NCBI GenBank assembly: GCA_002269645.1
Contig: NIVC01002975.1
Coordinates: 1-64,000, forward strand
DNA length: 64,000 bases
Source of the DNA: Macrostomum lignano
Lineage: Eukaryota
Reading direction: 5' to 3'
A program made the translations under genes and the position numbers. Positions within the stretch are counted from its first letter, which is position 1. Each line of letters opens with the position of its first letter. The notes below the pieces were generated by a model. The model was not told where the DNA came from, made no database searches, and worked only from the letters and a program-made list of their open reading frames with translations. Of the stretch, positions 1,561 through 60,369 are shown piece after piece.

Positions 1561-4500
1561 GTGATGAAAATCGTTGAATCAATTCGGCCCGACCGTCAGA
1601 CGCTGATGTTCAGCGCGACATTCCCCCGCCAAATGGAGATTCTGGCGCGCAAAGTGCTGGACTCGCCTATCGAAGTGGTGGTGGGCGGCCGGGCGGTTGT
1701 CTGCAGCGAGGTTCAACAGGAGATCATCCTGCTGACTGAGGACGACAAGTTCTTTAAGCTGTTGGAACTGTTGGGCGTCTATCAGGAGCGCGGCGGCTGT
1801 CTGATCTTTGTTGACCGACAGGAGAAGGCTGACGAGCTGATGAAGCTGCTGATGAAGCATGCCTATCCGTGCCTGTCTCTGCACGGCGGCATCGACCAGT
1901 ACGACCGGGACAGCGTCATCACCGCCTTCAAGCGAGGCGACGCCCGCCTGCTGATCGCCACCAGCGTGGCCGCCCGCGGCCTTGACGTCACCGGCCTCAT
2001 TCTGGTTGTCAACTACGACTGCCCCAATCACTACGAGGATTATGTGCACCGCTGCGGCAGGTGCGACTGGGAGTTGCTTACTGTATCTAATCTTGTTAGA
2101 TGTCCTCTTAGACTGATTGATGCCTTTGACCCTCATCTCCCTCACGATACCTAAGGGCTGTCACCTTTGACCCTCATCTTCTCCCTCACGATGCCTAAGG
2201 GCTGTCACCTTTGACCCTCATCTTCTCCCTCACGATACCTAAAGGCTGTCACCTTTGACCCTCATCTTCTCCCTCACGATACCTAAGGGCTGTCACCTTT
2301 GACCCTCATCTTCTCAATCACAATACCTAAGGGCTGTCACCTTTGACCCTCATCTTCTCCCTCACAATACCTAAAGGCTGTCACCTTTGACCCTCATCTT
2401 CTCCCTCACAATACCTAATGGCTGTCACCTTTGACCCTCATCTTCTCCCTCACAATACCTAAAGGCTGTCACCTTTGACCCTCATCTTCTCCCTCACAAT
2501 ACCTAAAGGCTGTCACCTTTGACCCTCATCTTCTCAATCACAATACCTAAGGGCTGTCACCTTTGACCCTCATCTTCTCCCTCACAATACTTAAAGGCTG
2601 TCACCTTTGACCCTCATCTTCTCCCTCACAATACCTAAAGGCTGTCACCTTTGACCCTCATCTTCTCAATCACAATACCTAAGGGCTGTCACCTTTGGGT
2701 TGACGACTAAACATGGATTTTGGGGAAAGTTTGAGAGTGGGTCAGAGACCAAGCTCTACTGCTACTTTGCTCCCTGAGTCTCTTGATTTCAATGCTAATT
2801 ATTGAAATATTACACGTAAGCTTCAACTCTACCGCGCAGGACCGGCCGGGCCGGCAACAAGGGCCACGCCGTGACTTTCATCACTCGCGATCAGGAGAAA
2901 CACGCCGGCGATCTGATCTGGGCGCTTAAATTGGCCCAGGCAAATGTGCCAGCTAATCTGCAGGCTTTATGGGACGCCTACGTGCAGCGAATGGAGGCTG
3001 AGGGCAAACCTGTGAGTAGTATTATGATGTAACCGCCCTTGTCGCCTGTCCGCTCCGTAGAGAGACGAACGCATGACTAGAGGGGGCAATGACCGTAGGC
3101 TGCCTATGACCGGGCAATGACCTGACGGACCTCCAGCACCAGACTGTCCCGCCCACATGATTAGTAGCTTTGGTAGCGCTTCGTGACCAGAGGGCCAAGG
3201 ACCCACATGGACCCCACCTGTAGCCAAGGTGCAATAGTTGGTCACTCGGTCATAGTATGACCGAGTGGCTGCCACCACTCTATGTGACCTGGCGCACCTG
3301 GATCTTTCTACCAGACCTCTCGAGGCTAGAGCCCCGCCTGGATTGGTTACCAGGGGATTTAGGCTAACAGGGGAGACGCATGCAGCCGAGTACAGGGACT
3401 CTGCTTGGGGCATGATCGGGAACTCTGGGCTCAATCCTGGAGGATTTCTCAGCAGGGGATCCTTTGTGGCTGTGAGCGAGGCTGACTTGCGACTTTGATT
3501 ACTAAGAGTAGTATGAGGCGAACATGTACTGTCTACAGTTTAGATTGCTCAGGGCGAAGGGACGCGTTAGCATGGGGTTGCAACCTTCCTACTGCCATTC
3601 TGTGCCAAGACTCGCTAATCCCTCTACTGCACGCACACGCGGCCCCGCAGCACGCACTCACAGGCGGGCTTTGCACGGGGAGAGGCCATTAGCTTACCCA
3701 AACTTCCTTATGCTTTGCCACCCGGGAGAAAGGCTTAGCAAGCCATGAGTGAAATGATGGTGAAAGATTGAATAATGATGAAGTTAGTTAATAGTTAATA
3801 ATTAGGCCCTTAGGCAAATAAGCAGGCAATTAGGCAGCTTCACTATTGAGTAAAATACAGCAAAAGATACGGTATCACAATTGGCTCAGCTCTCTAATCA
3901 GACAATGGAAAATAGGCAAACCCCGGATAAGCAAAGGCAATTAGAGCACAAATTAGTAGCAGGAACTTACCGGCAGCTGCACAGAGAGAGAGAGAGGCGG
4001 AGTGACCGAGGGCGGCTGTAGGCTGCAGTCAGGCAGACGGTGAAGCGGCGATGCGCTGGAGCGACGAGGCGCCGATGTAGATCAGGCGATGCTGATGATG
4101 CTGGGCGGTATCAGACCGCTGGCCGATAGGCGAGCTCACTTGGGGAGCTAAGGATAACTTGGCGGTAACAGACCGCGGACCGGCAGGGATTCGTCTTATA
4201 GACGAATGGGTCAGAACTCAATCTGACAGCAAGTCCAAAGAAGGACGAGGAGAGGAACAGAGATAACCTCAGTTGAGTATTCTCATGCCGAAATCGCTTC
4301 CTTTTATAGACCTCACAGCCGCCTCCTCAAGGTCGTTACCATGGCTCCCTCTCTCTGATTGGCTGCCGGCAGAATGACGTCAGAATGAGTCATGATGAGA
4401 AGCATGAGACCGGCATAGCAACATGAGAAATCGGGAAAATGCGCAATCCGGAGGTGGGGTGGGGGGATAATTGGCGCAGCGGGTGGTCGCGAAAGTGTTG

Positions 4501-31700: not shown

Positions 31701-33238
31701 TCTTATACAGATAGACCAATTCGGCTCAGGACCATCAGGGCAACCAGGCCGACACGTAATTGCTGACTGCTAGTTTAACATTTGTTTCAGATTTTTCAAC
31801 GTTGTTTTTCAGTAGCGATAACAAATCGTTTGCTAACTGCTCACCACTGTTGCATTCTTCTAATATTGTCGCGGCCCAGGGCCTCGTGAAAATCTAATCT
31901 TATCGAGTTTTTGTTGGCTAACATGCATTATTGTGGTTTATGCACTCGGCACTACTACTGCGTAAATGATTCAGTTCCAGATCCTCACTCTGGGTCGCTG
32001 TCGCCCTCCCGGATCCCTATCTGCTAGGCTGACACCCTCCCCGGATCCTCAGTTGCTAGGCCAACACCCCCGGATCCTCAGTTGCTAGGCCGATACCCCC
32101 GGATCCTCAGTTGCTAGGCCGACACTCGCCAAGATCCTCAGTTGCTAGGCCAACACCCCCGGATCCTCAGTTGCTAGGCCGACACCCCCGGATCCTCAGT
32201 TGCTAGGCCGACACTCGCCAAGATCCTCAGTTGCTAGGCCGACACTCGCCAAGATCCTCAGTTGCTAGGCCAACACCTGCCAAGATCCTCAGTTGCTAGG
32301 CCGACACCCCCAGATTCTCAGTTGCTAGGGCGACACCTGCCAAGATCCTCAGTTGCTAGGCCGACACCCGCCAAGATCCTCAGTTGCTAGGCTGACACCC
32401 GCCAAGATCCTCAGTTGCTAGGCTGACACCCGCCAAGATCCTCAGTTGCTAGGCCGACACCCACCAAGATCCTCAGTTGCTAGGCCAACACCCCCCGAGA
32501 TCCTCAGTTGCTAGGCCAACACCCCAGGATCCTCAGTTGCTAGGCCGCCAACACCAGATCATAAAGCTGGGTCACTGCCATTCTCTCAATGGATGAGGAG
32601 AATGTCTTCAAGAATGCTTAAGAATGTCTCCAAACCCACATTGCACCGCAGGCATCTCCTACGACTCCAGCCTGCCATCTGCCGGTAGCAGCCTGTCACT
32701 GTCCGGCCAGCCGGCCACCTGGCGCCGGGCGCTGTCCGACTTGGCCTGGCCGGCCCTGTCCGTATTCATGGTGTTCGCGGTGTCGCTCAGCCTCTACCCG
32801 GCCCTGCTCAGCTCGGTCAGCTCAGTTGCCAGGCCTGACTCGCTCTATTTTGTCCCGCTGGCCTGCTTCCTGGCATTCAACGCTGCCGACCTGCTGGGCA
32901 GGTGTTTTGTCAGCTTCTCATTGCCCAGCTCAAATCGCCTGCTTGCCGGCCTGGCCCTGCTCAGGCTGGTCTTTGTTCCCCTATTCCTGGCCTGCAACTA
33001 CCAGCCCAGGCGGCAGTGGGCGATCCCGCCAGCGTTCACTTCTGACGCCGCTCTGCCCATCCTTGTCAGCCTGTTCGGCCTTAGCAACGGTTACCTGGGC
33101 GCTCTGAGCATGACTCGAGGCGCCGCCGCAGCCGAGATTCAGAATGCCGAATTGTACGGCGCGTTGATGAGCTTCTTTCTGACCCTGGGACTGGGAACGG
33201 GATCTGCGGCTTCGTTTGTGTTCACCACGCTGCTGTGA
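28778..33238 (+). CDS. SLC29A: Equilibrative nucleoside transporter (SLC29/ENT family), 486 aa
   Basis: Exons 28778-29333, 30396-30526, 31367-31553 and 32652-33238. Motifs [50 protein letters not shown] and SNGY. Subtype not assigned. Confidence 0.95.
29365..30200. repeat. CAG/TAG-based about 18-bp repeat, ENT intron 1
   Basis: Unit agcaagcagcagtagtagt. Confidence 0.95.
30533..31340. repeat. 20-21-bp minisatellite, about 39 copies, filling ENT intron 2
   Basis: Unit actgacactccagtgcccccc starts 6 nt after the donor and ends about 25 nt before the acceptor. Confidence 0.95.
32030..32510. repeat. 29-31-bp minisatellite, about 15 copies, ENT intron 3
   Basis: Unit gatcctcagttgctaggccgacacccgccaa. 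Confidence 0.93.
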
Positions 33239-42524: not shown

Positions 42525-43037
42525 CGCTAGAGCTCAAATTATTTATTTGCACATGTTTAAACATGATGCATTCCGAACTATTCGACCAAGCTTATAAGTT
42601 TCTGCTATAGTATATTCGCATATGACCATACATTTGTTTTCCTTTAAAGAATTTTCTATTCATCTTATATGCGTAAATGTATATACACCCGGTAATATTT
42701 CTTATTTCAACAACTGACCGTGAAAATGTTATGCATCGGATTAATAAAGTACAATACAACACACTGACTGTTGAGTTTCCCGGGAAATTTTTTAAACTTG
42801 GAAATTTGCTATAACTCAAAGTACTCTGTGTCACTTTTCCCTCCGTTACTTTCACCACGATGTACAGAGAAAACCACGTAGGGGACCAGGTACCTGCTGA
42901 TAAGTGACAGATTTGCCGTTCCAACATGAGTACAAACTACTGCTTCATCTGAGCCGCAATCTGCCTAATTTCCAAGCGTCACAGCTTTCAATTAAAGCCA
43001 CAGCCTAACAGACACCCAGTTCACAGTCCATTCTGCT

Positions 43038-43615
43038 ATCCTCAGTGGGTCATAAAGCTATCCTCCGTGGGTCATAGAGCTATCCTCCATGGGTCATAGA
43101 GCTATCCTCCGTGGGTCATAGAGCTATCCTCCGTGGGTCATAGAGCTATCCTCCGTGGGTCATAGAGCTATCCTCCGTGGGTCATAGAGCTATCCTCCAT
43201 GGGTCATAGAGCTATCCTCCGTGGGTCATAGAGCTATCCTCCATGGGTCATAGAGCTATCCTCCATGGGTCATAGTGCTATCCTCCGTGGGTCATAGAGC
43301 TATCCTCCATGGGTCATAGAGCTATCCTCCATGGGTCATAGAGCTATCCTCCATGGGTCATAGAGCTATCCTCCGTGGGTCATAGAGCTATCCTCCGTGG
43401 GTCATAGAGCTATCCTCCGTGGGTCATAGAGCTATCCTCCATGGGTCATAGAGCTATCCTCCATGGGTCATAGAGCTATCCTCCGTGGGTCATAGAGCTA
43501 TCCTCCATGGGTCATAGAGCTATCCTCCATGGGTCATAGAGCTATCCTCCGTGGGTCATAGAGCTATCCTCCGTGGGTCATAGAGCTATCCTCCGTGGGT
43601 CATAGAGCTAGCCTC
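43038..43615. repeat. 22-bp minisatellite, about 26 copies
   Basis: Unit agagctatcctccgtgggtcat. Confidence 0.95.
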
Positions 43616-44120
43616 AGTAGGTCATTCGGTATCATTTAATATTATCCAGGCAAATCAAGTCTGATTTCCCCGATTAAAAGTACTAAAACAAGATAGAAAA
43701 ACACTGGTGCAGTTTTTGGTTTAGCAAGTTGCAGTCATTGCACTGCAGGATTATTATTTAACTAATACGAAGAAATAATTAAAAAACAACGAATTGCATT
43801 ATACATTAGACATTTAAAAAGCCAGACGGACACTTAACTACAAGTAACTAGTTAGATTTTACAATATTTTTTAAAGTTCTTAAAACTGCAGCAATCGCTG
43901 TAGAAGACCTATTAAATTAACATCTTCATCCTGTTTTACCGACTCCAGACTGCCTCAGGGCTCGAAATTAAGTACTTAGCACTGAAGATTGCAGAATAAC
44001 TTGAAAAACCAAATCCAGTGCGTGTGCATAGCGAGCAAGAGAGAAAAAGGTCACCCTAGGTCCCAGCCACGAGCCAGGCCGATAAACAGTTTAGCTTTCC
44101 TCTTGCCCGTGTGTGTCTGA

Positions 44121-44325
44121 CTTTGACCTCTCTCCTTACTGCGCTCTCATTGGCTGAGCCAGATTGGGCCTGGCCCCAAGGCCGAGTTTCGTCCTTTGAT
44201 CTCTCTCCTTACTGCTCTCTCATTGGCTGAGCCAGATTGCGCCTGGCCCCAAGGTCGAGTTTCGTCCTTTGATCTCTCTCCTTACTGCTCTCTCATTGAC
44301 TGAGCCAGATTGGGCCTCCGCCTCC
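44121..44325. repeat. 73-bp tandem repeat, about 3 copies
   Basis: ctttga(c/t)ctctctccttactg recurs at 44121, 44194 and 44267. Confidence 0.9.
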
Positions 44326-44735
44326 TAAGCTGAGTTTAATCTATCTTGCGTTCACTTGTGCACATCGAGTTAACTGCTTGTTCTTTCTTAAACCCATATG
44401 CTCCTGAGGCCGCAAACCCTGAGAAAGGAAAGGAAATTTTAGCTGACACATTAAATATTGGTAACAATGCGCAGACAACTACTTATAAAAGAGTAGACGC
44501 TATGCTTTTTTAAAAACTTTAATTGCGAGCGACATATCTAGCAATTCCAGTATCTGTGCTATTAAGCAATAAAAACTGTTATTTAAAAAAAATTATAACC
44601 CCACTTAAAAACATTTGAAGCTAGTTTGTCTTTGATAACTTTTTCAATGATAAATTTTAAAAAATTAGTTTACTAGCTATTTAAACAGCTGACGCTATTT
44701 CTTCATCTAGATTAGCTCGTATATCAGTTATACCA

Positions 44736-47700
44736 TTAATCAGCATTGGCTTCGCCTTCCGTTTTGCTGTCTGCCGCGGCGGCGGTGGCGATGGCGGCCC
44801 CGGTGTCGGTCTTGGCCGCTGTGCCGTCTCCGTTCTCGGAGGCCTTGCCAGCGGCAGAGGCGGCGGCCGTCTCGCCCCGGCTGTCCCGCTTCTGCCGCTT
44901 GTGCGACCTCGAGTCGCGCCTGCCGTCGCCGGCCTCGTCTTCGCTGTCGCTGAGCTCGTTGTCGCCGGAGACGCGCTTGTCTGAGGAGCGGATGCTCACC
45001 CGCTGCTCGTCCCGCTTGCCGCGGTCCTGCTCCGCCTCCTCCTGGGCGACGTCCTCGTCAACCGCCATGCCGTCTTCGGGATGTCTGGCGGCGTTGGGGA
45101 ATGGAAACTACTGATTGCAAATGCTCAACTTGCTACTTATTAGTAGCAATATGAAATTATTCAAAGTAAAATTTAAAATATCAATAGGATTTTAGTGCAA
45201 CAAATCTCATACTTGCTACTCGTTAGTAGCAATATGCAACTCTAAAGTAAAAACAGGAGAAATCAACCACAGGGATAACCACCCTGGGATTCCTTTCACT
45301 ATAACCCCATATGGAATTCTACTGATGGGGATTCCAATGGCTGGGATTTTATGGCAGGGGATTCTACTTAATTCACAGTGTATATCAAATCAAGAGTTTA
45401 TCTTCTTTATGCACCCCCATCCCAAATTAAAAAGCCATTAGCAAAGAACCGCAGGCAGCGCCAGACACGCACCCTGCATCTGCACCCCAGGCGAGTTCGG
45501 CAGCATTCGCAGATTCTCCAGCAGCCGAGTTTTGATCTTCTCCAGGTACTCGGGCGTGTTCTGGTTGGACATGTTCGACGGCTGGATGTGCAGCTTGAAG
45601 TCCGGCCCGAAGTACTCAAAGTAGTCATTGTAGGGTAGCTCGTTCGGAATCTCCTGGCCCAGGGCGATGGCCGTCTCGTAGGTCCAGCAGCGGGCCACGT
45701 TTCTAGGAATTGGGAATGATTTTGGGATCAGTTGGTCACGTTTCTAGGAATTGGGGGCGATTTTGGGATCAGCTGGTGACGTTTCTAAGAATTGGAGGGA
45801 TTTTGGGATCAGCTGGTCACGTTTCTAGGAATTGGGGAAGATTTTGGAATCAGCTGGTCACGTTTCTAGGAATTGGGGAAGATTTTGGGATCAGCTGGTG
45901 ACGTTTCTAGGAATTGGGGGCAATTTTGGGATCAGCTGGTGACGGCAACCAGCGTCCCATATTAATCATCAAGAAGCATTCCAGATTCCCAGATGAGGCA
46001 CCCTCATGAAACACCCAGAATCCCAGATTAAGGATGCAGAATAGCAGATGAAGCACCCAGAATCCTAAATAAGCACCCAGAATCCTAGATAAGCCCCCCC
46101 AGCATCCCAGATGAGGCTCCAGCATCCCAGATGAGGCACCCAGCATCCCAGATGAGGCAACCAGCTCACCTGATGGTGTAGCCGCCGCCACCCAGCAACA
46201 GCAGGGGGGTGTCGAACTTCTTCATGAACTGGACGCAGCGGCCGTGGCCCTTCAGCGACAGGTTGAAGCAGCCAAGGCGGTCCCCAGCCAGAGAGTCGGC
46301 ACCGCACTGCAGAACGGTGGCGGAGGGCCTGTAGTGCTCCATGACCTTGGTGATGACGGGGGCAAAGATCTGCTCAAATGCCTCATCGTCAATGCCGTCC
46401 CTCAGCGGAAAGTTCACAGCGTAGTGCTTGCCCCGGCCGGCCCCGATGTCCTTGAGGTCGCCGGTGCCGGGAAAGTACTCGCCGTACTTGTGAAACGAGA
46501 CGGTCATGACGCGGTCGGTGGTGTAGAAGGCCTCCTCGACGCCGTCTCCGTGGTGGATGTCGATGTCGACGTACAGAACCCGCTGGTGGTACTTGAGCAG
46601 CTCCAGGATTGCCAGCACGATGTCGTTGACGTAGCAGAAGCCGGACGCCTCGGACTTCTTGGCGTGGTGAAGGCCGCCGCCCCAGTTGATGGCGATGTCG
46701 GTGGCGCCCTTGTTCAGCTTGACGGCGCCGGCGATGGAGCCGCCCGTGCTGAGCTGGCAGAACTCGTACAGGCCGTCGAACACGGGGCAGTCCTCGCCGA
46801 CGTTGAAACGCTGCATCTGCTTGTTGAACTCGTGCATGTTGTCCGGCCGGATGGAGCGCAGGAACTTGATGTAGTCGTCGCTATGGAAACGCGTCATCTC
46901 TTCGGCTGTGGCCTTGTGCGGCCGGTAGATCTCCATCTTGCGGTACAGGCCGTAGTTGAGCAGCAGGTTGTGCGTCATCCTGATGCGGTGCGGCTTCATG
47001 GGGTGGCCCTGGCCATAGTAGTAGTTGCCGATGTCGCCTGGGCAAGTTGGTGGAAGCCGATATATGCTATATTATATCTTTATACAAAATACAAATGGGG
47101 TTAATAGGGTGACTAGGGTCGGGGAAAATTATAGAGATCAGAGCATATTGGTTGACACAGGGTTTGCCTTTTGTGAGTGTGACTGTGAATGCTAAAAACA
47201 CTCAATAACTATTATTTTATACTATGTGATTATTGTTTTGTAAGCTTTATATTCACATAATAGATTATAACAGTAATAAAATATACATGTGCATATTTTC
47301 CTCTTCTATTAGTTTTATATTTTCATAGCAAAGCTTTTCAAAAGTTCTGACTGATTTTCAAATAGAGAATTAAATTTTATCATTGTCACTAACTAACTTT
47401 ATAGCATAATTCTTTAGCTTCCCCTGCTTTATTATTTTAGCCTATGCCCTCCAAACAGTTAAATTGTGCCACAATGTCAATTGGACCATGTACCAATTCT
47501 TAATAATAAATAAAATTTTAATAGCAACAGCAAGAAATGCTTATGTTAGCATAGAAGCCCTGGAATACTTGCAGGCCTTAAGTGCTAATGATATTTTTTT
47601 AGCAACAAAGCAAAGTATTTATAGACTTTAACAATAATAAGTAAACCTTTGGCAGAACTATTTTTGTTAGATTTTTTTAGCTTTATATATGCTAAGCATT

Positions 47701-48219
47701 AAGAAACTTTTTTTCCTATTACTATGTATGACTATAAGTTCATGCATGTATATAATTTTCATGGCTCTTAATAACTCAACTTGGTTCTATTAAATATTCT
47801 AGATATGTAAAAAATATCATACAAGACTTAGGCCTAAAAGTAATGATATAGGCCTAATAGAACCTTGGAAAATTAGGCTACCCTTGGAATTTTTTTCTGA
47901 ACTCTCAGCACAGCATATGCTTGGCAATTTTTAGAATTTATTCCAATGAGGTCTTGTGCACTAAGAAAAATCAATACTTTTGCTTGCATTGAAAAATCCT
48001 ATGCACTTCAGACTTGTAGGCCTATGCTATGAGTCTGAGTATGACCAGGCCTAGGGCTGGGCATACATGTAGTAGTCAGATATGTTATATGTATAGAAAT
48101 ATATGTTTAATGTTAGTATTATTAGAATTTATAACATTCCCTTTCTTACAAGCATACTTAGACTTACCATCGTAATAATAGCAAACTCTTTTCTTGGTTC
48201 CAGTCAAAGAGCTGGTCAT
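44736..48219 (-). CDS. HDAC1: Class I histone deacetylase HDAC1/2 (Rpd3), with an apparent 1-nt frameshift in the last exon
   Basis: Exons 48219-48168, 47037-46170, 45702-45473 and 45084-44736. [54 protein letters not shown] and [14 protein letters not shown]. Confidence 0.95.
45697..45943. repeat. 41-bp array x6 duplicating the HDAC1 splice acceptor
   Basis: Minus-strand cccaattcctag|aaacgt recurs with AG ending at 45703, 45744, 45785, 45825, 45866 and 45907. Confidence 0.95.
45985..46160. repeat. Degenerate about 20-bp array at the HDAC1 donor side
   Basis: Unit cccagatgaggcacccagcat. Confidence 0.8.
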
Positions 48220-48894
48220 TCTGAGATTAAGATTCTGGTAATAATGTTGAACGAAACAATATTACAGAAATTTGGCCCTGATAATTTAACTTCAGTGGTA
48301 TAATAAGAGATGGTGATTCAGAAAAAGTCAATTAGTCAGCATCAGCAGAGCAAAACTCAAAAGCAAAGCTAAATTAACAACTGCAACTCGTTTGATCTTT
48401 GTTCGCTAGATAAATAGTAAATAAAAAATAGCGGCTGGGAAAAGTGTACTCGTAATTTAGTTCATGTTTCTTTTAAAATATTGTCACTGACGAGAACTTT
48501 TCATTCAACATGCACCAGATTAAAGAAAAGATCGGTAGTCAGAAGATTCATATATGCCTGAATCGGCTGAGGCCTCTGTTATAACTTTAAATGTATAAGG
48601 CAAGGACGACTAGTTGTTCTTGGGAATGTGCACATATAGGTACAATGTATGTTTTAAATGCATGTGTACATAAAATTCTATGGTTTTTGACGCATTAATC
48701 AATGGTTTTATATTCACTCTTAAAAAGGGAGGAATGTGTGAATATAAATCACGGATCGGAGTTTTTCATATTGTGCCAAAAAAAATGAAAGTTTCTACCT
48801 CGTGCATGACCGTAATATTCGCGGTGCGAAGGGAGTCCATAAGAATTGCCCGCAGACAAATTGCCCGCCGTGATTTGCCCGGTCTTCAATTCCT

Positions 48895-49950
48895 GCTGCT
48901 GCTGAGCCTCCAAAGCGGCTTCCGCTCGGACAGGTCCACTACCGAGCAGGTTGCCACCATCCGCTCTGTCATCGAGGCCTGCAAGACCCGCCAGCGCTCC
49001 GTGTCAATTATCTTCGCCGACTTTCGCAAGGCGTTTGACTCGGTGTCCAGGCCTGCGATCGCGTGGCTTCTATCTCATTATGGCGTACCTGCTGCGCTGC
49101 TGAGCGCGGTGATAGACCTCTACCGCAACTCCAGGGCTTTGTCATGTCGAGCGACGGCCCCACAGAAGAGTTCGGCACCAGCTCAGGCGTCCTTCATGGC
49201 GACGCGCTGGCTCTTCTGCTCTTCCTCGTAGTTGTGGACTACGTGCTTCGTCGGTCCCTCCGCGAGGATGACAGCTACTTCTTGCTGGTCCCACGCCGAA
49301 GCTCCAGACACCCTGCTGTTTCGCTTCTCGCTCTCGCGTATGCTGACAACATCGCTCTGCTCTGCCGCGATCCAGCTGCTGCCCAGCGCGCTCTCACAAG
49401 GCTTTGCAATGAGGGTGCCCGTGTTGGGCTGCGGCGATTGTCTCCGACAGGAGGAACCAGGCCTGGCGCGCCGCGCACTTCCTCAGGAACATTTTCATTC
49501 AGCTGCCAGAGAGGACCTGAAGGTGCGCCTGTTCCTCGCGGCCTTCTGTACGGCATGGAGGCTGTGCCGCTGACCGAGACGCGAGAGCGGGCCTTGGACG
49601 CGCTTTACCGATCGCTGCTGCGCTACGCGCTGGGCGTGCACTACCCGGAGCGCCTACCGACCAACGCTCTGATGGCCCACGCCGGAGCTCCGCCCCTGAG
49701 CGCTACCCTGCGCCGGCGCCGCCAGATGCTCCAGACCCTGGGTCGCGGTGCGCCCGTCCCTCTGGCCCTGGCCATGCTGCACCGGCCGACCGAGCAATTG
49801 CGCCACGGCCAGGCCCGCACTGCCACTCTAACGGACTGCCTCATCGCTGACTTGCAGGCGCTTAAGCTGACCCCTCAGGCTGCTGCTGCCTGCCCCTCCC
49901 GCCTGTTCTGCGAGCGCGTGCGCGCGAGGCGCCTCCCCACTGCGTCTTAA
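48895..49950 (+). mobile_element. RTE-like non-LTR retrotransposon, 5'-truncated and inactive
   Basis: QSGFR..RSTTEQV, IIFADFRKAFDSV, GVLHGDAL, YADN (YADD mutated), LLYGMEA..LDALYRSLLR. Frameshift near 49135 and an internal deletion. Confidence 0.9.
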
Positions 49951-56310: not shown

Positions 56311-56544
56311 CTACCCTCCACAACTATCCTCCACAGCTACCCTCCACAGCTACCCTCCACAGCTACCCTCCACAGCTACCCTCCACAGCTACCCTTCACA
56401 GCTACCCTCCACAGCTACCCTCCACAGCTACCCTCCACAGCTACCCTCCACAGCTACCCTCCACAGCTACCCTCCACAGCTACCCTCCACAGCTACCCTC
56501 CACAGCTACCCTCCACAGCTACCCTCCACAGCTACCCTCCACAG
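56311..56544 (+). repeat. 13-bp minisatellite array A, about 18 copies
   Basis: Unit cagctaccctcca. Confidence 0.95.
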
Positions 56545-56546
56545 AG

Positions 56547-58553
56547 TTGTAACTGAGTCAGAGGCCGTGTTTACTGTGTAGCCAAACTCTTGTACAATCT
56601 CGCTGGGTTAAATTCAGTCACTGCAGGATTCCAAATTCAGTCCTTGTAGATTTTCACGCCAGCCCGAGCAGCGCGGGGGTGCGGGCGCAGCGCCACCGGG
56701 GAGGCGGGTGGATCCCGGGCCGCCTCTCCAGCAGCTCTCGGTGTAGCGTTCTGCGTATGGACGCCGGCGTCGGCCAAGTCATGGCGTAGCAGCAGCGAGT
56801 TGCCGGCCACCCGCTGGACCGTCCAGGCACCGCTCTCGAATGGCGTCTGCGTCTTGCTGGCACTGACCCGCCGTCGTAGCACCGAGTCGCCGACCTGGAC
56901 GTCGTGCCGCCGTGGTCGCCTCCTTGCGTCCGAGTGCTGCTTCATCGCCGCCTTGGCGCCGGCGTCGGCGTCTCTCAGCCGCTGCTCGTTGATGCGGACT
57001 CGCTGGGATGGCCGGGCGGCGGGGATGACGTCGTTTAGCCGCCGGCCCATCAGCAGCTCGGCTGGTGCGCGCCCGGTGGCCGTGTGCGGCGTGTTCCTGT
57101 AGGCCAGCAGCCACTCGTCCAGAGCGGTCCTCCAGACCCGCCGCTCCTCGATGGCTGCTCGCACGACTTTGTTGATGGAGCGGTTCAGCCGCTCCGTCAT
57201 GCCGTTGGCCGCTGGGTAGTAGGGCGTGATGAGGCGGTGCTTGATCCCGTAGCTCGCCAGGAACCGGCCGAACTCCTTGGACGAGAAGGGCGGTCCATTA
57301 TCTGTCACGAGCTCCTGCGGGATCCGAAGTGGGCGAACATCTCTCGCAGGCGGGGAATCAGTGCCTCGGCCGTCGTCTGCGTGAGCTGCACCTCCGGAAA
57401 CCTTGAGTAGCGGTCCACGCACACCAGCAGCATGTTGTGGCTGATGGGTCCCACGAAATCGGCGCCGATCGACAGCCAGGCGCCTGCGGGGATCGGCGCC
57501 GGCTGCAGAGGCGTGGCCCGGACGGCTGGCGTGTGCGACGTGACGGCGCAGCTGCGACATCGACTGATGAATTCCTCCGCTTGAGTTGCCATCCTCGGCC
57601 ACCAGACCTTCGTGCAGAGTCTGGCGATCGTCTTCTGCGAGCACTGCATGGTGCCCTTCATGCGCTAGTTCGAGCATCTGCTGCCGCAGATCAGCTGGCA
57701 CGACGATTCGGTGGTGCCGAAGGAGGACCCCGTCAACCGCAGACAGCTCCTCTCGCAGCGCGTGGAGCGAGCGCATCTCGGGGTTGGAGCGATCCCAGCG
57801 GCCGCCTTGCGTCGCCGCTATCGCTGCCCGGATGACTGGGTCGCTGGCAGAGCTCTTGCGGATGTCCTGGAGCGTCAGCGCCATCGGCACAGCCGCCTGC
57901 GCCACCTCGTTGATGTAGGCCTCCCTCAGCTGCTCGCCAAAACTTCTGCCTTGTGCGCTTAGGGGCTGCCTGCTGAGTACATCTGCAGCATTGGAGACTC
58001 CCGGCTGGTACTCGACCTTGAACACTAGGTGCTGGATCCTCAGCGCCATTCGCTCGACTCGTGGAGGCGGCCGCGACCCAGGCGCGAACATGGCCGTCAG
58101 CGGCTTGTGATCGGAGACCACTGTGAACTCGCGCGATCCATGCAGGTAGTACTCAAACTTCAGGCAGCCGAACTTCATGGTGAGTGCCTCCTTCTCGGTC
58201 TGCGAATATCGCCGCTCGACATCGGAGAGGGTCCGGCTGGCGTATGCAACCGGCCTTGAGTTGCCGTCGCGCTGCACCTGCGCCAGGATGGCGCCCAGTC
58301 CGGTCGGCCCCGCGTCCACGATCAGCTGCGTGTGTAGCCGCTTGTCGTAAAAAGCCAGCGTTGTCGGCTCCGCGATGCTGCGCTTCAGCTGCTCAAAGGC
58401 TTCCCGCACTTTCTGCAGCTCTTGCCCTGCGCTGCGGTGCACGTGGGGTGCCATGGCCTGCCGCAGCGATCGCAAGATCCGTGCTGCTTCGGTCTCTGCG
58501 GCCTCTGTGGCTTCTGGTCTCTTCTGACTGCTGCGAGCTGCTTCGATTCTCAT
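56547..58553 (-). mobile_element. Gypsy/Ty3 pol fragment (RNase H + integrase), frameshifted
   Basis: LIVDAGPTGLGAIL, AYASRTLSDVERRYSQTEKEAL, SDHKPL, AHEGH, DFVGP, VTDNGPPF, YYPAANGMTER. Frameshifts near 57660 and 57320. LTR-end-like GTTACA at 56547-56552. No RT. Confidence 0.92.
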
Positions 58554-58554
58554 G

Positions 58555-58825
58555 ACCCTCCACAGCTACCCTCCACAGCTACCCACCATGGCTACCCTCA
58601 ACAGCTACCCTCCACAGTTACCCTCCACAGCTACCCTCCACAGCTACCCTCCATGGCTACCCTCCACAGCTACCCTCCACAGCTACCCTCCACAGCTACC
58701 CTCCACAGCTACCCACCATGGCTACCCTCAACAGCTACCCTCCACAGCTACCCTCCACAGCTACCCTCCACAGCTACCCTCCACAGCTACCCTCCACTGC
58801 TACCCTCCACTGCTACCCTCCTACA
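58555..58825 (+). repeat. 13-bp minisatellite array B, about 21 copies
   Basis: Same unit as array A. Confidence 0.95.
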
Positions 58826-59447
58826 GTAAAATAAAATGAAAATGAAATAATCAAACGCATAAAGATCTACATGTAGGAGCATAGAAACCAGAGGGTGGAG
58901 CGCCCATCCGACATTGTCATGTGGCAGGGTCACTCCAGGTCACTCCAGCTCTGATGAAGCGCAGCCATTCAGGCGTTACAGCACAAGCAGCTGCACACAA
59001 TCAACTTCCTTCCCAAAAGTCGTCTGTCGTCCGGGCCTCGCGCCTGGCAATTCCATATTTTGATTTCATTTCTTGACGAAGAAAGATTGGCATGAATTAT
59101 GAATGCTGTAGCAACATCAAGCAGCTAACGTGGCAGCTAAGTCTTGCTTCCACAACTGACGGACTAAGTCGTTAGAAGTTTGTCACCTCCCTTGGCGTGT
59201 TTTAGCAACTCAATCGTGTGGGCGGACCGGCCCATGCCGCTGCTGCCGCGGCTGTTGTGCGTCACTCTTATATAAATTGATTGATTTTTGCGATACTTAA
59301 CAATATTTCATTAACAATCAAAATTGAAGAGTAAATTACCATTGGGACCGGTATTTTTCCTGGTGTATGGATTGCTCAAATTTGAAACATGAGTTAGCAA
59401 GTGCCTCCTGAAGAATCGGGACTAAGAGTGGAATAGTTGAAGGAATG

Positions 59448-59958
59448 GTAGCTGTGGGGCGTAGCTGTGGAGGGTAGCTGTGGAGGGTAGCTGTGGAGGG
59501 TAGCTGTGGAGGGTAGCTGTGGAGGGTAGCTGTGGAGGGTAGCTGTGGGGCGTAGCTGTGGAGGGTAGCTGTGGAGGGTAGCTGTGGAGGGTAGCTGTGG
59601 AGGGTAGCTGTGGAGGGTAGCTGTGGAGCGTAGCTGTGGAGGGTAGCTGTGGAGGGTAGCTGTGGAGGGTAGCTGTGGAGGGTAGCTGTGGAGCGTAGCT
59701 GTGGAGGGTAGCTGTGGAGGGTAGCTGTGGAGCGTAGCTGTGGAGGGTAGCTGTTGAGGGTAACTGTGGAGGGTAGCTGTGGAGGGTAGCTGTGGAGGGT
59801 AGCTGTGGAGGGTAGCTGTGGAGGGTAGCTGTGAAGGGTAGCTGTGGAGGGTAGCTGTGGAGGGTAGCTGTGAAGGGTAGCTGTGGAGGGTAGCTGTGGA
59901 GGGTAGCTGTGGAGGGTAGCTGTGGAGGGTAGCTGTGGAGGGTAGCTGTGGAGGGTAG
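59448..59958 (-). repeat. 13-bp minisatellite array C, inverted, about 39 copies
   Basis: Reverse complement of the A/B unit (gtagctgtggagg). Confidence 0.95.
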
Positions 59959-60369
59959 CGTGCTCCGGCCATGCTCCATGCAGGTCAACAGGTGGTAAAT
60001 TCCGTGCAATCTGTCCAGGTAAAACACCATACATTGACATTACATGTAGAAGCTCAAAAGCAGCTGTGGAACTTCTAATTAAGATGGCGAGGTGCTAATT
60101 AGCCCGCGAGAGATTAAGTTTCAGGTGAGCAAGTGTTTGTGAAGGGGTTTGGAACCAAAGCTAACAGACTGCGGGGACTCAAGCACAAGGAGAGGAGAAT
60201 AAATAATATTAGGCCTGTTGTTCACAGTTTAATTGCCATAGAGATCAGCACTTGTCAATCATTTTTAATAATTATTTTATTTTAGCCATCGTTCTGGTAT
60301 GACCGGGTTCGGTGTTTACACTGAGATTATGAGAGCTAAGATGCTGAAGGGTGTGTTCAGGTTCTACAT

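What the first reader, a model, noticed from the sequence alone, without database searches (positions are those of the whole stretch)
45697..46169. HDAC1 intron holds five tandem copies of its own splice acceptor, each followed by an in-frame stop
Seen: the 41-bp unit contains the real pyrimidine tract, the AG and the first 6-7 exon bases (cccaattcctag|aaacgt). Five decoys lie upstream of the true acceptor at 41/41/40/41/41-nt spacing. Splicing to any decoy reads A AAC GT(G/C) ACC A(G/A)C TGA, a stop in the fifth codon. Established: spliceosomes usually favour the first AG after the branch point, and premature stops trigger NMD. Inference: the spliceosome must skip five near-perfect upstream sites, or the array acts as a copy-number-tunable poison-acceptor rheostat on a core chromatin enzyme.
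Basis: partly seen in the sequence, partly recalled or inferred. Interest (0 to 1): 0.85.

Follow-up and report, generated by a model that had tools for sequence, protein, structure and literature searches.

The report
Splice-junction minisatellite in flatworm HDAC1 intron
A 41-bp tandem repeat in an intron of the flatworm Macrostomum lignano HDAC1 gene really does copy the splice acceptor five times, but it is a hypervariable "mirage"-type minisatellite, a kind already described elsewhere, in a genome full of such repeats, and there is no sign that it regulates the gene.

Summary
On the minus strand, a 467-nt GT..AG intron (45703-46169) of an HDAC1/2 orthologue ends in a 41-bp x 6.3 tandem array (45688-45944). 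The last unit of the array is the real acceptor. The five upstream units carry the same tract, an AG and an in-frame TGA.

The window is Macrostomum lignano. Four other genomic copies of the gene carry the same array with 1, 10, 11 and 14 decoys, so the array is real and hypervariable.

The stop is not five separate events. It is made by the unit junction (..GCTG|AT..) and inherited by every copy. The same junction forms a branch-point-like CTGAT 26 nt before each AG.

Decoy AGs show no constraint: 2 of 41 are lost, which is the average rate per column. All RNA-seq-based gene models join exon 2 to the true acceptor.

A quarter of the window is minisatellite. Neighbouring arrays also differ in copy number between haplotypes.

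The architecture matches the amphioxus "mirage" minisatellites, the human F7 IVS7 VNTR and the CBS 844ins68 duplication, all of which are spliced normally.

The intron position is absent from four other animal phyla, so the intron is lineage-specific. The rheostat idea is untested and unsupported. Interest is low to moderate.

The parts
45688..45944 (-). 41-bp minisatellite x 6.3. It consists of a partial copy 0 (45933-45943), decoy units 1-5 (45892-45932, 45851-45891, 45810-45850, 45770-45809, 45729-45769) and the authentic unit (45688-45728). The authentic unit is 26 nt of intron plus the first 15 nt of exon 3.
   Evidence: TRF; pattern search (5 hits against 0 expected); unit table
45703..46169 (-). 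Intron 2 of the HDAC1/2 gene (467 nt, GT..AG, phase 2, splitting the Arg codon AG|A between YTI-R and NVARCW). The position is lineage-specific.
   Evidence: The position is intronless in Lineus, Daphnia, Branchiostoma and Orbicella.
45703..45704 (-). Authentic acceptor AG, used in all gene models.
   Evidence: Protein models P0001 and P0121-P0124 read ...GGGGYTIR|NVARCW.... The annotation is RNA-seq based.
45727..45731 (-). CTGAT branch-point-like motif for the true acceptor (A at 45728, 26 nt before the 3' splice site). The same 5-mer, which contains the in-frame TGA of the preceding decoy, recurs at every unit junction.
   Evidence: Read directly. Its role as a branch point is inferred from the yUnAy consensus and was not mapped.
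45744..45907 (-). Span holding the five decoy AGs (G at 45907, 45866, 45825, 45785, 45744). Each is followed 15 nt later by an in-frame TGA.
45945..46165 (-). Degenerate 21-bp minisatellite (consensus GCCTCATCTGGGATGCTGGGT) filling the 5' half of the intron. It is in register with the donor junction, but its pseudo-donors read GA, not GT.
   Evidence: TRF (46012-46165, 7.4 copies, 77% matches). The in-register junction 21-mer matches the consensus at 13/21, P about 4e-4.
46170..47037 (-). Exon 2 (868 nt, residues 18-307 of the 495-aa protein). It covers a stretch that holds six introns in Lineus.
   Evidence: tblastn
45473..45702 (-). Exon 3 (230 nt, NVARCW...VQMQ).
48168..48219 (-). Coding part of exon 1 ([18 protein letters not shown]), followed by a GTAAGT donor.
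44736..45073 (-). Exon 4 coding part up to the TAA stop, using the acceptor of model P0001.

Best explanation
The array is a 'mirage'-type minisatellite.

Origin (inferred). A 41-bp segment straddling the intron 2 / exon 3 boundary of the Macrostomum lignano HDAC1/2 gene was tandemly duplicated. The segment was 26 nt of intron, with branch-point-like motif, C-rich tract and AG, plus 15 nt of exon. Duplication probably went through the CTG microhomology at its two ends. The array has since expanded and contracted by slippage or unequal exchange, as dozens of other minisatellites in this genome do.

Why only one copy is the acceptor. Only the last copy is contiguous with the rest of exon 3, so only it can give a functional mRNA. 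That copy is the one used in the stable transcripts. The upstream copies are by-products and sit inside the intron.

The stop. The in-frame TGA is an accident of the unit junction (..GCTG|ATCC..) and was inherited by every copy.

Why the decoys are bypassed (inferred, not shown). The tract is weak and interrupted by A residues, so use of a 3' splice site probably depends on downstream exon sequence. The decoys have only 15 nt of exon-like sequence, and these differ from the true exon at +8 and +11. Any transcripts that do use a decoy would carry a stop well upstream of the last exon junction and should be removed by NMD.

Net effect. Probably neutral or slightly deleterious, and buffered by the several copies of this gene in the genome.
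For: Shown.
- The unit spans the junction and includes 13/15 of the first exon bases.
- The same array is present in five genomic copies of the gene, with 5, 10, 1, 11 and 14 decoys. Unit variants are homogenised within each paralogue type.
- The window and L001 are the same locus at 98-99.6% identity, yet they differ in 4 of 9 shared arrays, for example a 22-mer at 26.9 against 58.9 copies.
- 24.6% of the window is tandem repeat, in 40 arrays. The genome paper reports 15% simple plus tandem repeats genome-wide.
- Across 41 decoys there are 29 minor states in 42 columns. The two AG columns carry 2 of them (TTG in L002, TAA in L004), so the AG is not constrained.
- At -26..+7 the true unit is not distinguishable from the decoys. 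The only fixed differences are exon +8 (G against A) and +11 (C against A).
- All GenBank and UniProt gene models read YTIR|NVARCW, and the GenBank models derive from RNA-seq transcript assembly.

Precedents in which junction-spanning repeats leave splicing normal.
- Amphioxus Adh3 and globin 'mirages', including acceptor-side BflGb6 with 6 against 3 units in two haplotypes.
- The human F7 IVS7 37-bp VNTR, whose pseudo-sites stay silent.
- CBS 844ins68, where the distal of two identical 3' splice sites is used.
Against: - There is no junction-level RNA data. A substantial NMD-masked use of decoys cannot be excluded.
- Gene models on near-identical copies may share multi-mapping reads, so correct splicing of each individual copy is not proven.
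- 39 of 41 decoys keep an AG and all 41 keep a stop. This is what recent copying predicts, but it is also what selection would give.
- The reason the distal site wins is inferred from general splicing knowledge, not from flatworm data.
Confidence: 0.8

Rival explanations
1. Poison-acceptor rheostat. Decoy acceptors compete with the true one. Decoy-spliced mRNAs carry a premature stop and are degraded by NMD. Array length would then set the HDAC1 output of each gene copy, and this would be maintained by selection or used for regulation.
For: - Decoys match the true site at -26..+7 and each has its own CTGAT motif.
- All 41 decoys are followed by an in-frame stop that would lie upstream of the exon 3/4 junction.
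- Copy number varies 1-14 between gene copies.
Against: - There is no constraint on decoy AGs.
- The single decoy in L002 has lost its AG.
- The stop is one inherited junction accident, not repeated convergence.
- Length variation is no greater than in unrelated neighbouring arrays.
- RNA-based models use only the true site.
- In the analogous F7, CBS and amphioxus cases the pseudo-sites are silent.
- No decoy-junction peptide from Macrostomum was found in the protein collection, which is a weak negative.
Confidence: 0.07
2. Footprint of intron birth. The intron is a recent, lineage-specific gain that was generated or enlarged by tandem duplication of its own junction sequences (Rogers-type or 'mirage' model). 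On this reading the two arrays are the remains of the event that created the intron, not later additions to an existing intron.
For: - The position YTIR^NVARCW is intronless in a cnidarian, a cephalochordate, a nemertean and a crustacean. The nearest ancestral introns are at least about 20 codons away on each side.
- Nearly the whole intron consists of two arrays, each in register with one splice junction.
- Ebner et al. predict that introns gained through mirages contain mirage-derived repeats.
Against: - The 26-nt intronic part of the unit has no counterpart in the exons, so a simple exon duplication cannot have produced it.
- The donor-side similarity is only 13/21.
- No intron-less Macrostomum copy or sister-species genome was available to date the gain.
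- All five copies already carry the intron, so it predates the A/B paralogue split.
Confidence: 0.1
3. Assembly artefact: the array is a mis-assembly of repeated reads.
For: The M. lignano genome is hard to assemble because of its repeats.
Against: - The array is present in five independently assembled loci.
- The window and L001 share units 1-4 in the same order and differ by an internal block.
- The arrays are only 80-620 bp long.
Confidence: 0.02

Closest known systems
'Mirage' minisatellites of amphioxus (Adh3: Canestro et al. 2002, cited through Ebner et al. 2010; globin genes BflGb6/BflGb9: Ebner et al. 2010, PMC3087553)
   Same: - Tandem repeats whose unit spans an intron-exon boundary.
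- BflGb6 duplicates the 3' end of an intron plus the 5' part of the next exon, exactly as here.
- Many units keep AG/GT signals.
- Copy number differs between haplotypes (6 against 3).
- Evolution is concerted within clusters.
- Splicing appears normal.
- The authors propose a link to novel intron positions.
   Different: - The host is a flatworm, not a cephalochordate.
- The unit is much shorter than in the globin genes (41 bp against 150-160 bp), though it falls within the 10-72 bp range given for Adh3.
- There are up to 14 decoys.
- Each unit carries a complete branch-point-like motif, tract and AG.
- The array sits in a lineage-specific intron whose other half is a second, donor-side array.
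Human F7 intron 7 37-bp VNTR (Borensztajn et al. 2006, PMC1557585)
   Same: The terminal element of the minisatellite spans a splice junction, giving several pseudo-sites identical to the authentic site. The pseudo-sites normally stay silent, and the site adjoining the exon is used.
   Different: - The F7 repeat is on the donor side and this one is on the acceptor side.
- In F7 the silence of the pseudo-sites was shown experimentally with 50 constructs. Here it is inferred from gene models.
CBS 844ins68 polymorphism (Romano et al. 2002, as cited in PMC1802585)
   Same: The intron-exon boundary is duplicated, giving two identical 3' splice sites, and the distal (authentic) one is selected.
   Different: - CBS has a single 68-bp duplication, not an array.
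- Distal choice there depends on G runs between the sites, and no G runs occur in the 41-bp unit here.
Unproductive splicing coupled to NMD (poison exons, AS-NMD)
   Same: An alternative splice choice would introduce a premature stop upstream of an exon junction.
   Different: Known cases have documented isoforms, NMD sensitivity, strong conservation and usually a feedback loop. None of these is shown here, and conservation was tested and not found.

Membership tests
Mirage-type (junction-spanning) minisatellite | Tandem repeat whose unit contains both intronic and exonic sequence of one splice junction, with the authentic junction as the terminal unit | tested here: met
   The unit is 26 nt of intron plus 15 nt of exon (13/15 identical). 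The array 45688-45944 ends inside exon 3.
Mirage-type (junction-spanning) minisatellite | Duplicated units retain splice signals (AG/GT) in many, but not necessarily all, copies | tested here: met
   39 of 41 decoys across five loci keep the AG. L002 unit 1 reads TTG and L004 unit 10 reads TAA.
Mirage-type (junction-spanning) minisatellite | Length instability between haplotypes or copies | tested here: met
   Five gene copies carry 5, 10, 1, 11 and 14 decoys. The window and L001 are the same locus at 98-99.6% identity and differ 5 against 10.
Mirage-type (junction-spanning) minisatellite | Concerted evolution within clusters | tested here: met
   Variant units are specific to each paralogue type. 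For example, TTGCC..TTTCTAG runs occur only in L003 and L004, and CCCTCC..TTAG only in the window and L001.
Mirage-type (junction-spanning) minisatellite | Regular splicing is not disturbed | tested here: inconclusive
   All RNA-seq-derived gene models use the true acceptor. No junction-level read counts or NMD-inhibited data were available. Three transcript contigs, L005-L007, show a normal junction but come from a sequence about 5% diverged whose intron status is unknown.
AS-NMD / poison splice-site regulator | The alternative PTC-bearing isoform is detectable and is stabilised when NMD is blocked | not testable with these tools
A peptide search found no Macrostomum fragment ending RNVTS (weak negative).
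AS-NMD / poison splice-site regulator | The poison element is under purifying selection or conserved | tested here: not met
   The AG columns mutate at the background rate (2 minor states in 2 columns, against 29 in 42 overall). The number of copies drifts from 1 to 14. The single decoy in L002 is dead.
Intron gained by tandem duplication (Rogers model) | The intron position is absent from outgroups | tested here: met
   [14 protein letters not shown] is encoded without interruption in Lineus, Daphnia, Branchiostoma and Orbicella.
Intron gained by tandem duplication (Rogers model) | The intron sequence is a duplicate of the flanking exon sequence around an AG|GT proto-splice site | tested here: not met
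   The 26-nt intronic part of the unit (ATCCCAAAAT..CCTAG) has no match in exon 2 or exon 3. The unsplit sequence ATCAG|AAAC is not AG|GT. Only weak in-register similarity exists on the donor side (13/21).

The most novel reading that the evidence does not exclude
The intron is a young, Macrostomum-lineage intron built almost entirely from tandem copies of its own two splice junctions. The different gene copies, with 1 to 14 complete decoy modules (branch-point-like motif, tract and AG), differ measurably in productive HDAC1 mRNA because a fraction of splicing goes to decoys and is cleared by NMD. This would be a natural dosage series for 3' splice-site competition and a live example of the 'mirage' route to intron gain or growth.
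Probability: 0.1. Interest if true: 0.6.

Novelty: new member of a known kind. Interest (0 to 1): 0.27.

Why it matters
The array is most useful as a natural experiment. Five near-identical gene copies in one animal carry 1, 5, 10, 11 and 14 acceptor modules that match the true one from -26 to +7. A single RNA-seq or RT-PCR experiment in a transgenesis-ready flatworm could therefore show how a spliceosome chooses among equivalent 3' splice sites, the acceptor-side counterpart of the human F7 model.

It also extends 'mirage' minisatellites from amphioxus to a flatworm. It links them to an intron at a lineage-specific position, which bears on how introns grow or arise.

It does not, on present evidence, reveal a new way of regulating HDAC1.

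Tried and rejected
- RNA structure. The 507-nt intron region was folded as RNA to test whether the G-rich 5' array pairs with the C-rich 3' array and hides the decoys. The z-score was -1.28, and 12 of 100 shuffles folded as well. Not significant.
- Rfam scan of 43000-49000 at E <= 0.1: nothing.
- Search with a 63-aa peptide ending RNVTS. Only short HDAC fragments at 84% identity or less came back, and none from Macrostomum. This is uninformative, because not even the known full-length Macrostomum proteins appeared in the list.
- Dispersed repeat. The 41-mer occurs nowhere else in the window, so it is not a dispersed satellite or transposon.
- Other junction-spanning arrays. At a helicase exon (array starts about 60 nt into the intron) and at a nucleoside-transporter exon (arrays about 100 nt upstream of the acceptor and in the 3' UTR), the arrays do not span a junction.
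- Simple Rogers-type origin of the intron from exon duplication: rejected, because the intronic part of the unit has no exonic counterpart.
- Canestro et al. 2002 (PMC117041) is not held in the library, so it is cited through Ebner et al. 2010.

Full report
**Observation**

The finding is accurate. The gene lies on the minus strand.
- Exon 2 ends ...GGC TAC ACC ATC AG at 46170.
- The intron runs 46169-45703 (GTGAGC...CCTAG, 467 nt).
- Exon 3 begins A AAC GTG GCC CGC TGC TGG at 45702.

Tandem Repeats Finder reports a 41-bp unit x 6.3 copies at 45688-45944 with 89% matches. A 37-nt unit pattern finds 5 matches with up to 3 mismatches, against 0.00 expected in shuffles.

Read on the minus strand, the units are ATCCCAAAATnnnCCCCAATTCCTAG|AAACGTsACCArCTG. 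There are five decoys with acceptor spacing 41/41/40/41/41 nt, followed by the authentic unit. From the split Arg codon AG|A, each decoy reads AAC GTS ACC ARC TGA.

- The repeat includes the first 15 exon bases (13/15 identical), so the array runs into exon 3.
- The 5' half of the intron is a second, degenerate 21-bp array (46012-46165 by TRF).

**Gene and organism**

A tblastn search with human HDAC1, written from memory and used only to locate exons, found 82-86% identity in the catalytic core.

The spliced exon 2 + 3 translation is 100% identical over 366 aa to UniProt A0A1I8HLF6 of the free-living flatworm Macrostomum lignano. The next-best hits are HDAC1/2 proteins of many animals at 86-90%. 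Solved human HDAC2 and HDAC1 match at E = 7e-257 and 2e-252.

The window is collinear with contig NIVC01001554.1 of assembly GCA_002269645.1 (L001) at 98-99.6% identity.

The coding sequence has four exons:

| Exon | Window coordinates (minus strand) |
|---|---|
| 1 (coding part) | 48219-48168 |
| 2 | 47037-46170 |
| 3 | 45702-45473 |
| 4 (to stop) | 45073-44736 |

**Other copies of the gene**

The 90% protein cluster holds several M. lignano models. Four of them could be fetched with their DNA. All carry the same intron and the same array, with different numbers of decoys:

| Locus | Paralogue type | Decoys |
|---|---|---|
| Window | A | 5 |
| L001 | A | 10 |
| L002 | B | 1 |
| L003 | B | 11 |
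| L004 | B | 14 |

- Exons are 98.3-99.7% identical among the copies. The whole exon 2-intron-exon 3 stretch aligns between types A and B at only about 85%.
- The window and L001 share units 1-4 in the same order and differ by an internal block.
- Unit variants are specific to each type, which indicates concerted evolution.

The array is therefore real, predates the A/B split, and is hypervariable.

**What the decoys look like as a population**

Across the 41 decoys:
- 39 keep the AG. L002 unit 1 reads TTG and L004 unit 10 reads TAA.
- All 41 are followed by an in-frame stop (TGA, or TAA once).
- There are 29 minor states over 42 alignment columns. The two AG columns carry two of them, which is at least the average rate. 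I see no sign that decoy AGs are protected.
- The intronic part of the authentic unit (-26..-1) varies among gene copies in the same way as the decoys do (CATT, CGCC, CTTC).
- The only fixed differences between the true units and all the decoys are exon +8 (G against A) and +11 (C against A).

**The stop and the branch point**

The TGA is formed by the last two bases of one unit and the first base of the next (...GCTG|ATCC...). It arose once, at the duplication junction, and was copied with the unit. 'Five in-frame stops' is therefore one event.

The same junction spells CTGAT, which fits the metazoan branch-point consensus yUnAy. Its A lies 26 nt upstream of the next 3' splice site. Its use as a branch point is inferred and was not mapped.

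Each unit is thus a complete module of branch-point-like motif, tract and AG. The 'first AG after the branch point' rule is not violated if the last module is the one chosen. The open question is which module is chosen.

**RNA evidence**

All protein models of the five copies read ...GGGGYTIR|NVARCW..., apart from P0125, which lacks the 16 residues just before NVARCW; none shows decoy-derived sequence. The GenBank models come from a genome-guided RNA-seq transcript assembly using StringTie and TACO (PMC5730564).

Three Logan transcript contigs (L005-L007) also show an uninterrupted junction. They are about 5% diverged and probably come from a sister species whose intron status is unknown, so they add little.

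Minor, NMD-sensitive decoy isoforms cannot be excluded.

**Genomic background**

- 24.6% of the window is tandem repeat, in 40 non-overlapping arrays. Of these, 39 have a period of 10 or more.
- Of nine arrays shared by the window and L001, four differ in copy number: 89-mer 3.0 against 4.0, 22-mer 26.9 against 58.9, the 41-mer 6.3 against 11.3, and a 24-mer about 18 against 10.6.
- The genome paper gives 15% simple plus tandem repeats genome-wide, and describes a duplicated karyotype with 180 Mb of blocks at least 95% identical.

Length variation of the HDAC1 array is what any minisatellite in this genome shows.

**Intron position**

[14 protein letters not shown] is encoded without interruption in Lineus (nemertean), Daphnia, Branchiostoma and Orbicella. 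In Branchiostoma and Orbicella the nearest introns are at about LKG^H and IAN^ELP.

M. lignano has lost the ancestral introns between residues 18 and 383. It has this one intron at a new position.

The 21-mer array is in register with the donor junction: ACACCATCAG|GTGAGCTGGTT matches the consensus at 13/21, P about 4e-4. Its pseudo-donors read GA. Nearly the whole intron is therefore made of tandem copies related to its two junctions.

A simple exon-duplication origin is not supported, because the intronic 26 nt of the 41-mer has no exonic counterpart.

**Comparison with known cases**

[quoted passage not shown] BflGb6 duplicates the 3' end of an intron plus the 5' part of the next exon, has 6 against 3 units in two haplotypes, shows concerted evolution, and is spliced normally by RT-PCR. 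The authors suggested mirages as a route to new introns (PMC3087553).
- *Human F7.* The 37-bp VNTR in intron 7 has its first element across the donor junction, and its identical pseudo-sites stay silent (PMC1557585).
- *Human CBS 844ins68.* This allele duplicates the intron 7 / exon 8 acceptor, and the distal site is used.

The present array meets the structural criteria of a mirage. It is an acceptor-side, multi-copy example in a flatworm.

**Mechanism and verdict**

- *Most likely (about 0.8).* This is a neutral or slightly deleterious junction-spanning minisatellite. The acceptor adjoining the real exon is chosen because only it has full exon context, and rare decoy products are removed by NMD.
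- *Rheostat idea (about 0.07).* It is neither supported nor strictly excluded.
- *Footprint of intron birth or growth (about 0.1).* This is the most interesting reading left open.

The finding is a true and tidy observation of a known kind of structure. Its value lies in being a ready-made natural series for testing 3' splice-site choice.

Noticed in passing
window 45078-45086 (minus strand, start of HDAC exon 4): The C-run is CCC in the window but CCCC in the four other gene copies. The UniProt model for this copy avoids the frameshift by using an AAG acceptor 12 nt downstream and loses the residues DIPE. This is either a homopolymer sequencing error or a real allele.
   Followed up: partly
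window 47222-47229 against L001 6937-17015: L001 carries about 10 kb of extra DNA in HDAC intron 1 that the window lacks. Two 186-bp tandem arrays lie within this stretch, near its two ends, so it is probably a transposable-element insertion polymorphism.
   Followed up: no
whole window: 24.6% of the 64 kb is tandem repeat, in 40 arrays, almost all with periods of 11-99 bp. Several arrays lie in introns and UTRs of neighbouring genes.
   Followed up: partly
window 45945-46165: The 5' half of the same intron is a degenerate 21-bp array in register with the donor junction (13/21 match, P about 4e-4). It looks like a donor-side counterpart of the acceptor array, but its pseudo-donors read GA, not GT.
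   Followed up: partly
window 43035-43625: A 22-bp minisatellite downstream of the HDAC gene has 26.9 copies here and 58.9 copies in the allelic contig L001.
   Followed up: yes
window 56311-56544, 58555-58826, 59447-59959: 13-bp arrays (CTACCCTCCACAG and its complement) lie on both sides of an ORF with reverse-transcriptase RNase H and integrase domains (56637-58553, minus strand). This is presumably an LTR retrotransposon with satellite-like flanks.
   Followed up: no
window 1561-2154 (+), 32624-33238 (+), 48680-49231 (+): Neighbouring coding pieces: a helicase C-terminal domain exon, an equilibrative nucleoside transporter exon, and a reverse-transcriptase fragment just upstream of HDAC exon 1.
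   Followed up: no
L005-L007 (Logan SRR28338163-5): HDAC1 transcripts 94-95% identical to the window read AGG instead of AGA at the exon 2/3 junction. They probably come from another Macrostomum species.
   Followed up: partly
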